64,000 nucleotides of DNA from Asterias rubens (taxonomy: Eukaryota), in contig NC_047068.1 in NCBI RefSeq assembly GCF_902459465.1, positions 12,648,001-12,712,000 of the forward strand, given 5' to 3'. Both the position numbers and the translations under genes were made by a program. The notes under the pieces were generated by a model. The model was not told the DNA's origin. It did not search any database and was given only the letters and a program-made list of their open reading frames with translations. Position 1 is the first letter of the stretch, and each line of letters opens with the position of its first letter. Shown piece by piece: positions 29,790 through 30,668 of the stretch.

Positions 29790-30668
29790 ATGATACGGTT
29801 TAACCATCTGAAACTTCCCGCACCTGCCAAGTTAAACCTCATGCTGAACATCATCGGTCGGCGAGAGGACGGATACCACAACTTACAAACCCTTTACCAA
29901 TTTCTGGACTTCTGTGATGAACTGGCTTTCACCTCAAGACTGGACGGAGAGATCAAACTAGCCACGCCCATGGAAGGCGTCAGTCCTTCCGATAACCTCA
30001 TCCTAAGTGCTGCTAAACTCCTTCAAGATGAATGCGGCGTGGAGTTCCTCGGTGCCACAATCAAGGTGACCAAACGCATACCCATCGGCGCAGGGTTAGG
30101 AGGTGGGAGTTCCAACGCTGCAACCACCCTCGTCGGGTTAAATCAACTATGGCAGACCCACCTTACAATTGGACAACTTCAGCGACTTGGGGCGACTCTA
30201 GGGGCAGACGTTCCAATATTTATACACGGCCACTCGGCATGGGCAGAGGGAATAGGTGACGAGTTGACTACAGTCACTATACCAGAGCGTTGGTACGTGG
30301 TCGTCTCACCCCAATGCCAAGTGCTCACTACCCGTATCTTTGGACATGTCGACCTTATTCGAAATACGCCCCCTACGACAGTGGATATCATATTAAAAAA
30401 TGGAGGAACAAACGACTGCCAGCCGCTCGTTAGTAAACTGTACCCCAAAGTTCAGGAAGCTTTAGAGTGGTTGGATTCTTTCGCCAAGGCTCAAATGACA
30501 GGAACAGGCTCATCGGTCTTTGCCAGTTTTACTTCTCGCTCAGAGGCCGTCAAGGTTATCCAGAAACTTCCAGAACGCTTCAAAGGATTCATATCAAGAG
30601 GTTTGAATTTGTCTCCTCTTCATCAAGCTGGGACAGTTTTATTATTGTTTCCTAATGGGAGGCTTTGA
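29790..30668 (+). CDS. ispE: 4-diphosphocytidyl-2-C-methyl-D-erythritol kinase (GHMP kinase), gammaproteobacterial type, intronless, 292 aa
   Basis: Motifs PAKLNL (catalytic Lys), GYHNLQT, DNL, KRIPIGAGLGGGSSNAA (ATP loop), LGADVP (catalytic Asp), TGTGSSVF and LSPLH are colinear with E. coli/Pseudomonas IspE as recalled. The ORF is uninterrupted. Confidence 0.95.
   Translation: MIRFNHLKLPAPAKLNLMLNIIGRREDGYHNLQTLYQFLDFCDELAFTSRLDGEIKLATPMEGVSPSDNLILSAAKLLQDECGVEFLGATIKVTKRIPIGAGLGGGSSNAATTLVGLNQLWQTHLTIGQLQRLGATLGADVPIFIHGHSAWAEGIGDELTTVTIPERWYVVVSPQCQVLTTRIFGHVDLIRNTPPTTVDIILKNGGTNDCQPLVSKLYPKVQEALEWLDSFAKAQMTGTGSSVFASFTSRSEAVKVIQKLPERFKGFISRGLNLSPLHQAGTVLLLFPNGRL

What the first reader, a model, noticed from the sequence alone, without database searches (positions are those of the whole stretch)
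29790..30668. Intact bacterial-type ispE (MEP-pathway kinase) embedded in an animal genome: candidate domesticated horizontal transfer
Seen: an 879-bp intronless ORF with every recalled IspE functional motif (Lys of PAKLNL, YH, DNL, Gly-rich ATP loop, Asp of GADVP). It has host MITEs within 0-2 kb on both sides, no Shine-Dalgarno sequence, an A at -3 of the ATG, and no sign of the bacterial neighbours lolB or prs. Established: metazoans make isoprenoids by the mevalonate route and lack the MEP pathway, so a lone IspE has no canonical substrate supply. Inference: horizontal transfer from a gammaproteobacterium, kept intact and possibly repurposed for another CDP-polyol or for intercepting microbial CDP-ME.
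Basis: partly seen in the sequence, partly recalled or inferred. Interest (0 to 1): 0.9.

Follow-up and report, generated by a model that had tools for sequence, protein, structure and literature searches.

The report
Bacterial ispE kinase gene domesticated in sea stars
Sea stars carry, splice and conserve a bacterial gene for one isolated step (IspE) of the non-mevalonate isoprenoid pathway, which animals are not known to have, so the kinase has been kept for a purpose that is still unknown.

Summary
Window 29790-30668 (+) is an intact 292-aa IspE: TIGR00154 scores 267 bits against a cutoff of 139, and the predicted fold matches E. coli IspE 1OJ4 at TM 0.92-0.95.

It is not contamination. The locus is collinear over about 20 kb with the Asterias amurensis chromosome, lies between host NLR genes and dispersed host repeats, and has an orthologue in Acanthaster planci (63% aa) that also sits beside an NLR.

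RNA contigs of the window's species show a spliced transcript. It has a non-coding 5' exon, a GT..AG intron at 29239-29548, and one exon carrying the whole ORF.

Phylogeny puts the sea stars in one clade (100/99). That clade is sister (100/98) to uncultured marine Pseudomonadales of the IMCC2047 type, inside Gammaproteobacteria. The best bacterial identity is 59%.

Purifying selection is clear. dN/dS is about 0.14, and 65 of 66 bacterial near-invariant columns are kept, including every catalytic and CDP-ME-contacting residue examined except Phe32 (Tyr in Asterias) and the variable Pro182.

I read this as one ancient gene transfer that was domesticated and still encodes an IspE-type kinase. Its substrate in the animal is unknown, and whether other MEP-pathway genes are absent could not be tested here. 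I found no paper describing it. Another first-stage note in this scan had already flagged the upstream intron.

The parts
29052..29238 (+). 5' non-coding exon (minimum extent). It ends at the donor ATGAG|GTAAGG. An ATG at 29234 opens only a 34-codon upstream ORF.
   Evidence: RNA contig X2 record 9 covers 29052-29236 and is then joined to 29547. Donor sequence read. The donor is exactly conserved in A. amurensis. A lower-depth X1 contig reaches back to 28210, so the true 5' end is not fixed.
29239..29548 (+). Spliceosomal GT..AG intron, 310 nt, in the 5' UTR.
   Evidence: A joint from 29236 to 29547 (cut +2, GT..AG) is seen in contigs of two runs, X1 and X2. The pyrimidine-rich acceptor ends in CACAG. 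The acceptor is exactly conserved in A. amurensis.
29549..29789 (+). 5' leader within exon 2, 241 nt, with two short upstream ORFs and in-frame stops before the main ATG.
   Evidence: Contigs run continuously from 29547 into the CDS. uATG analysis.
29790..30668 (+). ispE coding sequence, 292 aa, a single uninterrupted exon.
30669..31254 (+). 3' untranslated region, at least to here. The true 3' end is not determined.
   Evidence: X1 contig record 3 (1708 nt, 1 mismatch) runs 29547-31254 without a break. The nearest ATTAAA is at 31470.
30669..30765 (.). MITE-like element with 17-nt inverted ends, directly abutting the stop codon.
   Evidence: I6. RNA-contig depth spikes from about 69 to 11385 at 30646-30792. 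Present in A. amurensis at 97%.
31105..31330 (.). MITE-like element with 27-nt inverted ends (96% complementary).
   Evidence: I2. Depth spike.
31528..31968 (.). Dispersed host repeat.
   Evidence: At least 7 other copies in the window. Very high depth in all four RNA runs.
20639..23443 (-). Upstream host NLR gene (NACHT plus NLRC4 helical domain), a syntenic neighbour.
   Evidence: Collinear with A. amurensis. 51% aa identity to the NLR upstream of Acanthaster ispE.
33330..36176 (-). Downstream host NLR gene, a tandem paralogue of the upstream one (about 87% DNA identity).

Best explanation
A single ispE gene moved from a marine gammaproteobacterium into the genome of an early sea star. The donor belonged to the Pseudomonadales/Cellvibrionales radiation, and the nearest living relatives are uncultured IMCC2047-type bacteria. 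The transfer happened before the Asterias (Forcipulatida) and Acanthaster (Valvatida) lineages split. The gene landed in, or has since stayed in, a cluster of NLR immune-receptor genes. It acquired a host promoter and a 5' exon with a spliceosomal intron, and it is transcribed as a spliced mRNA. Purifying selection has preserved the full GHMP-kinase fold, the ATP loop, the catalytic Lys/Asp pair and the cytidine- and methylerythritol-contacting residues. The transfer, integration, splicing, transcription and selection are shown. It is inferred that the protein is translated and is an active ATP-dependent kinase, working like IspE by phosphorylating a hydroxyl of a CDP-linked polyol. Its most likely substrate is CDP-ME itself or a very close analogue, because the substrate pocket is essentially unchanged. 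Where that substrate comes from in an animal (microbes, diet, or an endogenous CDP-polyol such as CDP-ribitol) is unknown.
For: Identity: TIGR00154 scores 267.5 bits against a cutoff of 138.7. The match to E. coli IspE has E = 4e-86 over residues 9-280. The AlphaFold model has pLDDT 94.5 and matches 1OJ4 at TM 0.92-0.95 and rmsd 1.4 A.

Integration: the window is collinear with A. amurensis chromosome CP134962 over about 20 kb at roughly 96% identity, with NLR genes on both sides. The Acanthaster orthologue lies on a 3.4-Mb scaffold next to an NLR in the same orientation. Host repeats abut the ORF. The junction stretch is held by more than 20 DNA or unclassified runs under four organism labels and from many studies.

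Transcription and splicing: a GT..AG joint from 29236 to 29547 appears in contigs of two RNA runs. A 1708-nt contig runs from 29547 to 31254 with 1 mismatch. Raw RNA reads of a sister species cover the CDS. The splice sites are exactly conserved in A. amurensis. The Acanthaster gene model also has a 5' intron, of 4.7 kb.

Origin: the sea stars are monophyletic (100/99) and sister (100/98) to 21 bacterial sequences, within Gammaproteobacteria (the quick tree of 131 rows agrees). Members of that sister clade sit in the classic lolB-ispE-prs-rplY-pth-ychF context and include IMCC2047. The best bacterial identity is 59%, so there is no recent donor.

Selection: Asterias versus Acanthaster gives dN 0.30, dS about 2.1 and omega about 0.14, with the frame intact. 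Within Asterias the CDS differs at 1.25% of sites, against 3.72% upstream and 2.29% downstream. Asterias keeps 65 of 66 and Acanthaster 64 of 66 of the columns that are at least 95% conserved in 128 bacterial IspE. E. coli K10, N12, L15, Y25, H26, L28, D141, T181 and F185 all have identical counterparts.
Against: There is no protein-level or enzymatic evidence. The mRNA leader carries six upstream ATGs, which may limit translation. Read depth in the raw RNA runs is low, about 1-8x in the fraction sampled, and the tissues are unknown. X1 and X2 are only guessed to be RNA libraries, although the spliced joint argues that they are. dS is saturated, so omega between the two orders is approximate. 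The within-Asterias comparison rests on only 11 differences. Only two sea-star protein clusters were found, and no Patiria miniata hit appeared, so the gene may have been lost in some sea stars, or the databases and annotations are incomplete. Absence of the other MEP genes from the genome was not tested. Asterias has Tyr in place of the 98%-conserved Phe (E. coli Phe32) that lines the methyl pocket.
Confidence: 0.87

Rival explanations
1. The kinase has been repurposed. It no longer serves CDP-ME and instead phosphorylates an endogenous animal metabolite. One candidate is CDP-ribitol, made by the animal IspD homologue CRPPA/ISPD. Another is isopentenyl phosphate, which would feed the mevalonate-derived isoprenoid pool.
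For: Animals lack the pathway that makes CDP-ME (PMC2655357), whereas mammals make CDP-ribitol with an IspD homologue (PMC9010444 and PMC6970132). Asterias carries F36Y in the pocket that binds the substrate's methyl group. The branches leading to the sea stars are long, 0.37 plus 0.44-0.50 against a bacterial median of about 0.2. A weak isopentenyl-phosphate kinase side activity of IspE is recalled from the older literature and was not verified here.
Against: The substrate pocket is otherwise unchanged, and Acanthaster keeps Phe at that site. A real change of substrate would normally leave shared substitutions around the pocket, yet the ten sea-star-specific shared substitutions lie outside the listed contact residues. 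No paper links IspE to CDP-ribitol. Echinoderms already have a dedicated isopentenyl phosphate kinase of another family (PMC3857490 table).
Confidence: 0.3
2. The gene is a transcribed but functionless relic of a transfer, drifting neutrally and intact only by chance.
For: The enzyme is an orphan with no known pathway partners in animals. Expression is low and the leader has many upstream ATGs. No hit was found in Patiria miniata.
Against: The frame is open in lineages separated by dS of about 2. Omega is about 0.14. Of 66 near-invariant sites, 64-65 are retained. The CDS is 2-3 times less diverged than its flanks within Asterias.
Confidence: 0.04
3. The ORF is bacterial contamination or an assembly chimera and is not part of the animal genome.
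For: The ORF is bacterial-type and its coding sequence has no intron.
Against: Flanks are collinear in two independent chromosome-level assemblies, and a third species has the same neighbour. Host repeats directly abut the stop codon. There is a spliced transcript. Many independent DNA runs hold the junction. No bacterium is more than 59% identical. No bacterial neighbour genes are present.
Confidence: 0.01
4. The gene is an ancient eukaryotic gene inherited vertically and lost from all other animals, not a horizontal transfer.
For: None specific.
Against: The sea-star clade nests among the Pseudomonadales/Cellvibrionales-type sequences within Gammaproteobacteria with strong support, not with plastid-type or deep-branching IspE. 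No other animal hit appeared among the best 120 of either protein search.
Confidence: 0.01

Closest known systems
Bacterial IspE (YchB), 4-diphosphocytidyl-2-C-methyl-D-erythritol kinase of the MEP pathway; E. coli structures 1OJ4 and 8QC7
   Same: Same family by the curated HMM, and same two-domain GHMP fold (TM 0.92-0.95). It has the same glycine-rich ATP loop, the same catalytic Lys/Asp pair, and the same Tyr/His/Phe cytidine clamp. The length is similar, with no added domains.
   Different: It is encoded in an animal nuclear genome with a eukaryotic 5' exon and intron. It has no lolB or prs neighbours and no known IspD or IspF partners. It has a 12-residue low-confidence C-terminal tail. 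In Asterias, Phe32 (E. coli numbering) is replaced by Tyr.
IspE of uncultured marine Pseudomonadales, including gamma proteobacterium IMCC2047 (P0272, P0019, P0275 and related)
   Same: It is the closest bacterial relative and the sister clade (100/98), at 55-60% identity, and it comes from a marine habitat.
   Different: These are ordinary chromosomal genes in the lolB-ispE-prs operon context. The sea-star clade is sister to them, not nested within them, so the actual donor lineage has not been sampled or the transfer predates their radiation.
Domesticated bacteria-to-animal enzyme transfers, as catalogued for example in the Metazoa HGT compendium PMC13342648
   Same: It shows the same hallmarks: it nests within bacterial sequences, is integrated among host genes, has gained an intron, is expressed, is under purifying selection, and has orthologues across related hosts.
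   Different: Most well-known cases bring a self-sufficient activity, such as glycoside hydrolases, amidases or toxins. This one is a single middle step of a multi-enzyme pathway that the host otherwise lacks.
CRPPA/ISPD, the animal homologue of the preceding MEP enzyme IspD
   Same: It is a precedent for an MEP-type enzyme working in animals on a CDP-polyol (CDP-ribitol) outside isoprenoid synthesis.
   Different: It belongs to a different protein family and is widespread in animals. It is not a recent bacterial acquisition. No link to the sea-star IspE was shown.

Membership tests
IspE (TIGR00154, CDP-ME kinase) | Scores above the curated equivalog cutoff over the full length | tested here: met
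   267.5 bits against 138.7, residues 7-280 of 292.
IspE (TIGR00154, CDP-ME kinase) | Two-domain GHMP kinase fold closest to solved IspE structures | tested here: met
   Pfam GHMP_kinases_N and GHMP_kinases_C. The model has pLDDT 94.5. The top 18 PDB matches are all IspE, with 1OJ4 at TM 0.92/0.95 and rmsd 1.4 A.
IspE (TIGR00154, CDP-ME kinase) | Glycine-rich phosphate-binding loop and catalytic Lys10/Asp141 (E. coli numbering) | tested here: met
   The loop lies at 98-111. K14 and D140 align to K10 and D141. Both are invariant in the 71-sequence alignment. Residue roles are taken from PMC11541488 and bioRxiv 10.1101/2024.06.17.599194.
IspE (TIGR00154, CDP-ME kinase) | CDP-ME recognition residues: Asn12, Tyr25, His26, Thr181 and Phe185, plus the methyl pocket Leu15, Leu28 and Phe32 | tested here: met
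   N16, Y29, H30, T180, F184, L19 and L32 are identical. Phe32 is Tyr36 in both Asterias species and Phe in Acanthaster. Pro182 is Thr, but this position also varies in the closest bacteria.
IspE (TIGR00154, CDP-ME kinase) | Catalyses ATP-dependent 2-phosphorylation of CDP-ME | not testable with these tools
   This needs a recombinant enzyme assay or complementation of an ispE-depleted E. coli strain.
IspE (TIGR00154, CDP-ME kinase) | Operates within a complete MEP pathway (dxs, dxr, ispD, ispF, ispG, ispH in the same genome) | not tested
   No tool here scans the whole sea-star genome. None of the scan's notes on this genome mention these genes, which is weak evidence. Established knowledge says animals use the mevalonate route (PMC2655357).
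Domesticated bacteria-to-animal horizontal gene transfer | Nests within bacterial sequences in a supported phylogeny | tested here: met
   sea-star clade 100/99, sister to a bacterial clade 100/98, inside Gammaproteobacteria.
Domesticated bacteria-to-animal horizontal gene transfer | Physically linked to bona fide host genes and repeats, reproducibly | tested here: met
Domesticated bacteria-to-animal horizontal gene transfer | Eukaryotic gene features and expression | tested here: met
   A spliced GT..AG 5' intron and continuous mRNA contigs. Splice sites conserved. A 5' intron also in Acanthaster.
Domesticated bacteria-to-animal horizontal gene transfer | Orthologues in related hosts under purifying selection | tested here: met
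Domesticated bacteria-to-animal horizontal gene transfer | Absent from outgroup animals (other echinoderm classes, other phyla) | tested here: inconclusive
   No other animal protein appeared among the best 120 hits of either search. Those lists are truncated, and unannotated genomes cannot be seen.

The most novel reading that the evidence does not exclude
The sea-star IspE is a host enzyme that acts on a cytidine-diphosphate polyol absent from standard animal metabolism. In one version it captures CDP-ME released by associated or invading bacteria, as part of microbial sensing or interference, possibly in functional partnership with the NLR genes that have flanked it since before the sea-star orders diverged. 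In the other version it phosphorylates endogenous CDP-ribitol to make a previously undescribed metabolite.
Probability: 0.12. Interest if true: 0.85.

Novelty: new member of a known kind. Interest (0 to 1): 0.62.

Why it matters
Functional transfers from bacteria to animals are accepted but still few, and most bring a stand-alone activity. This one is a single internal step of the MEP pathway. It has been kept with its active site nearly untouched across two sea-star orders, which recalled knowledge places at 200 million years or more. That implies a supply of a CDP-ME-like substrate in sea stars, or a hidden second activity of IspE. Either would be new biochemistry. IspE is also pursued as an anti-infective target on the premise that animals lack it, and sea stars are an exception. 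The locus also shows how a bacterial ORF gains eukaryotic expression, by sitting behind a host-type first exon and intron. Finally, it gives a clean shared marker for dating events within Asteroidea.

Tried and rejected
1. Remnants of bacterial neighbours. tblastn with LolB, Prs, RplY, Pth and the upstream TPR protein found nothing in the window or in either orthologous locus. At DNA level, bacterial similarity is confined to the CDS.

2. Compositional amelioration. GC, GC3 and CpG observed/expected of the sea-star CDS overlap with both the host NLR genes and the bacterial homologues. They are uninformative.

3. An N-terminal targeting extension in Asterias, proposed by another first-stage note. 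Only one intron is supported by RNA. The exon-1 ATG is in frame but stops after 34 codons, and contigs are continuous from 29547 into the ORF. The dominant transcript therefore has no extension. The Acanthaster gene model does have a 48-aa Arg/Lys-rich extension. It is not similar to the Asterias leader, and whether it is real was not tested.

4. More animal orthologues. A second protein search seeded with the Acanthaster protein found none.

5. A functional link to the nearby CMAS-like gene. Three candidate exon pieces gave no Pfam hit, so I dropped this.

6. Identifying organism B as A. amurensis through the 30113 C>T variant. The A. amurensis locus has C there, so this is unresolved.

7. 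Literature. Five searches combining ispE, MEP, GHMP or methylerythritol with sea star, echinoderm, metazoa or HGT terms found no report. The supplements of the Metazoa HGT compendium are not held, so a listing there cannot be excluded.

Full report
**The observation.** The ORF listing returns a 292-aa ATG-initiated ORF at exactly 29790-30668 on the + strand. The sequence shows A at -3, no purine-rich Shine-Dalgarno-like stretch, and an in-frame TGA 33 nt upstream. The product hits Pfam GHMP_kinases_N and GHMP_kinases_C. It hits the NCBIfam equivalog TIGR00154 (ispE) at 267.5 bits against a cutoff of 138.7, over residues 7-280. Against PDB sequences the best matches are E. coli and Klebsiella IspE (E about 1e-86, residues 9-280), with one 5-residue gap.

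**It is part of the animal genome.**
- The two best protein hits are annotated sea-star proteins. One is Asterias amurensis (98% identity, on a 22.4-Mb chromosome record). The other is Acanthaster planci (63%, on a 3.4-Mb scaffold). After these come thousands of bacterial IspE at 59% or less.
- The A. amurensis locus is collinear with the window from about 18.6 kb to 38.5 kb at roughly 96% identity. Single-exon NACHT/NLR genes lie on both sides of ispE.
- In Acanthaster an NLR gene lies upstream of ispE in the same relative orientation. It is 51-52% identical in protein to the window's NLRs.
- A 97-bp element with 17-nt inverted ends begins at the first base after the stop codon. Another element with 27-nt inverted ends lies at 31105-31330. 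A dispersed repeat at 31528-31968 has at least seven other copies in the window, one of them about 2 kb upstream of the ORF.
- tblastn found no trace of LolB, Prs, RplY or Pth, and bacterial DNA similarity stops at the CDS.
- The stretch spanning the intron, leader and first 310 bp of the CDS is held at 0.59-0.98 of sampled words by more than 20 DNA or unclassified runs, under four organism labels and from many studies.
- Contamination or a chimeric assembly is therefore excluded for practical purposes.

**It is a eukaryotic gene.**
- I laid four RNA runs on 28000-32400. In two runs of the window's own species, a contig joins 29236 to 29547 across a GT..AG gap. One 1405-nt contig covers 29052-29236 and then 29547-30766. 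Another contig, of 1708 nt, runs unbroken from 29547 to 31254 with a single mismatch.
- The boundaries are a consensus donor ATGAG|GTAAGG at 29238/29239 and a pyrimidine-rich acceptor ending CACAG at 29548. Both are exactly conserved in A. amurensis.
- Raw RNA-seq reads from a sister species cover the CDS at low depth.
- The Acanthaster gene model also has a 5' intron, of 4.7 kb. Its exon 1 ends ATGCTGAG|GTAAGC, and residues 3-335 are encoded in one exon. In Acanthaster the exon-1 ATG reads in frame into the kinase, giving a 48-residue basic extension.
- In Asterias the equivalent ATG at 29234 is in the same frame but terminates after 34 codons. The ORF therefore starts at the bacterial-type Met.
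- The shared layout is a first exon, then an intron, then a leader plus the whole ORF. This fits a bacterial ORF that came to lie behind a host-type first exon and promoter. That step is inference, and the similar placement of the ATG could be chance.

**Origin.**
- A scan of GTDB species genomes returned marine Cellvibrionaceae, Porticoccaceae, Stutzerimonas and Halomonadaceae as the best named relatives, at 47-58% identity.
- A 131-row tree and a careful 66-row tree with bootstraps agree. The three sea-star sequences form one clade (100/99). That clade is sister (100/98) to a clade (96/91) of 21 sequences from uncultured marine bacteria. The whole group lies inside Gammaproteobacteria.
- Members of the sister clade are labelled Pseudomonadales bacterium or gamma proteobacterium IMCC2047. 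They sit in the canonical lolB-ispE-prs-rplY-pth-ychF arrangement.
- One clade plus shared synteny means one transfer, before the Asterias and Acanthaster lineages separated.
- A. amurensis and A. rubens are dated at about 28 Mya in PMC11090083. From my own recollection, Forcipulatida and Valvatida represent a deep split of crown sea stars, of the order of 200 Myr or more. The saturated dS of about 2.1 is consistent with that.

**Selection and intactness.**
- Asterias versus Acanthaster gives dN 0.30, dS about 2.1 and omega 0.12-0.14, with a single one-codon indel.
- Between the two Asterias species the CDS differs at 11 of 879 sites (1.25%, omega about 0.3). The upstream flank differs at 3.72% and the downstream flank at 2.29%.
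- Of 66 alignment columns that are at least 95% conserved in 128 bacterial IspE, Asterias keeps 65 and Acanthaster 64. Individual bacterial rows keep 56-66.
- Structural papers name the E. coli residues that bind or act on CDP-ME: Lys10, Asn12, Tyr25, His26, Asp141, Thr181 and Phe185, plus the methyl pocket Leu15, Leu28 and Phe32. Their counterparts in the window protein are K14, N16, Y29, H30, D140, T180, F184, L19, L32 and Y36.
- The only change at a conserved site is Phe to Tyr at position 36. It occurs in Asterias but not in Acanthaster. Pro182 is Thr here, but this position also varies among the closest bacteria.
- An AlphaFold2 model built on a 71-sequence alignment has mean pLDDT 94.5. 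Only the last 12 or so residues are disordered. It superposes on the E. coli ternary complex 1OJ4 at TM 0.92/0.95 and rmsd 1.4 A. The next hits are other IspE structures, then homoserine and mevalonate kinases.

**How it most likely works.** The protein is shown to be an IspE by sequence, predicted structure and active-site composition, and the gene is shown to be under constraint as a coding sequence. It is inferred that the protein is made and is an active ATP-dependent kinase. Because the substrate pocket is essentially unchanged, its preferred substrate is likely to be CDP-ME or something very similar. The source of such a substrate is unknown.

I considered these candidates, none of them tested:
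- CDP-ME from associated bacteria or from the diet.
- The endogenous CDP-polyol CDP-ribitol, made in animals by the IspD homologue CRPPA/ISPD (PMC9010444 and PMC6970132). No paper links IspE to it.
- Isopentenyl phosphate, a weak side activity recalled from older literature and not verified here. Sea urchins are listed as already having a dedicated IPK of another family, so this would be redundant.
- A role tied to the flanking NLR genes, which rests only on adjacency.

Evidence against efficient expression: the leader has six upstream ATGs, and depth in the raw RNA runs is modest.

**What could not be tested.**
- Whether the rest of the MEP pathway is absent from this genome. No tool scans the whole genome, and none of the scan's notes mention those genes.
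- Whether other sea-star orders and other echinoderm classes have the gene. Only two sea-star protein clusters were found. Patiria miniata gave no hit, which could be loss, an annotation gap or a database gap.
- The tissue pattern of expression, the protein itself, and enzymatic activity.

**Novelty.** Gene models exist in public annotation. A. amurensis names it a CDP-ME kinase-like protein, and Acanthaster calls it an uncharacterized protein. Five full-text searches found no paper that describes or discusses an ispE or MEP gene in sea stars or any metazoan as a horizontal transfer. The Metazoa HGT compendium does not mention sea stars in its text, and its supplements are not held. I classify it as a new member of a known kind, a domesticated bacteria-to-animal enzyme transfer. 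Its unusual feature is that it is an orphan middle step of a pathway the host is believed to lack. Other first-stage notes on this genome flag further candidate bacterial-type genes, which I did not check. One note had already proposed introns upstream of ispE. I confirm one intron but not the proposed N-terminal extension in Asterias.

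Noticed in passing
window 20639-23443 (-) and 33330-36176 (-): Two single-exon NACHT/NLRC4_HD NLR genes, about 87% identical to each other, bracket ispE. The same arrangement is seen in A. amurensis, and Acanthaster also has an NLR upstream of its ispE. The bacterial-derived gene has therefore sat in an NLR cluster since before these orders split.
   Followed up: partly
L001 (Acanthaster) 10001-10008 and 14730-14872: The Acanthaster gene model adds a 48-residue Arg/Lys-rich N-terminal extension, read from an exon-1 ATG through the leader. 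This could be a targeting peptide or an annotation artefact. Asterias has an ATG at the equivalent spot just before its donor site, but that frame is closed by a stop.
   Followed up: partly
window 14725-15267 (+): A 180-aa ORF with a GIY-YIG nuclease domain (E = 1e-5), probably a remnant of a mobile element.
   Followed up: no
window 47195-48049 (-): A 284-aa ATG-initiated ORF with no Pfam match.
   Followed up: no
window 51131-58766 (-): Another first-stage note calls this a CMAS (cytidylyltransferase) paralogue. Three candidate exon pieces that I picked gave no Pfam hit on their own, so I could not confirm its identity. Its nearness to a CDP-substrate kinase is probably coincidence.
   Followed up: partly
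L002 (A. amurensis) 1-20879 (-): The public annotation has a 136-aa histone-fold gene model spanning the whole 20.9-kb locus on the opposite strand. Either the NLR-ispE-NLR cluster lies in its intron, or the model is an artefact.
   Followed up: no
window 29617-29763: In raw RNA reads of the sister species, depth in this part of the 5' leader is 3-10 times higher than over the CDS. This is unexplained. It could be a short repeat, a separate small transcript or an alternative start.
   Followed up: no
window 28210-29236: A lower-depth RNA contig (X1, depth 11.5 against about 71 for the main transcript) extends the first exon back about 840 nt and crosses a 341-bp element with inverted ends at 28504-28844. 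This may be an alternative upstream start or read-through transcription.
   Followed up: no
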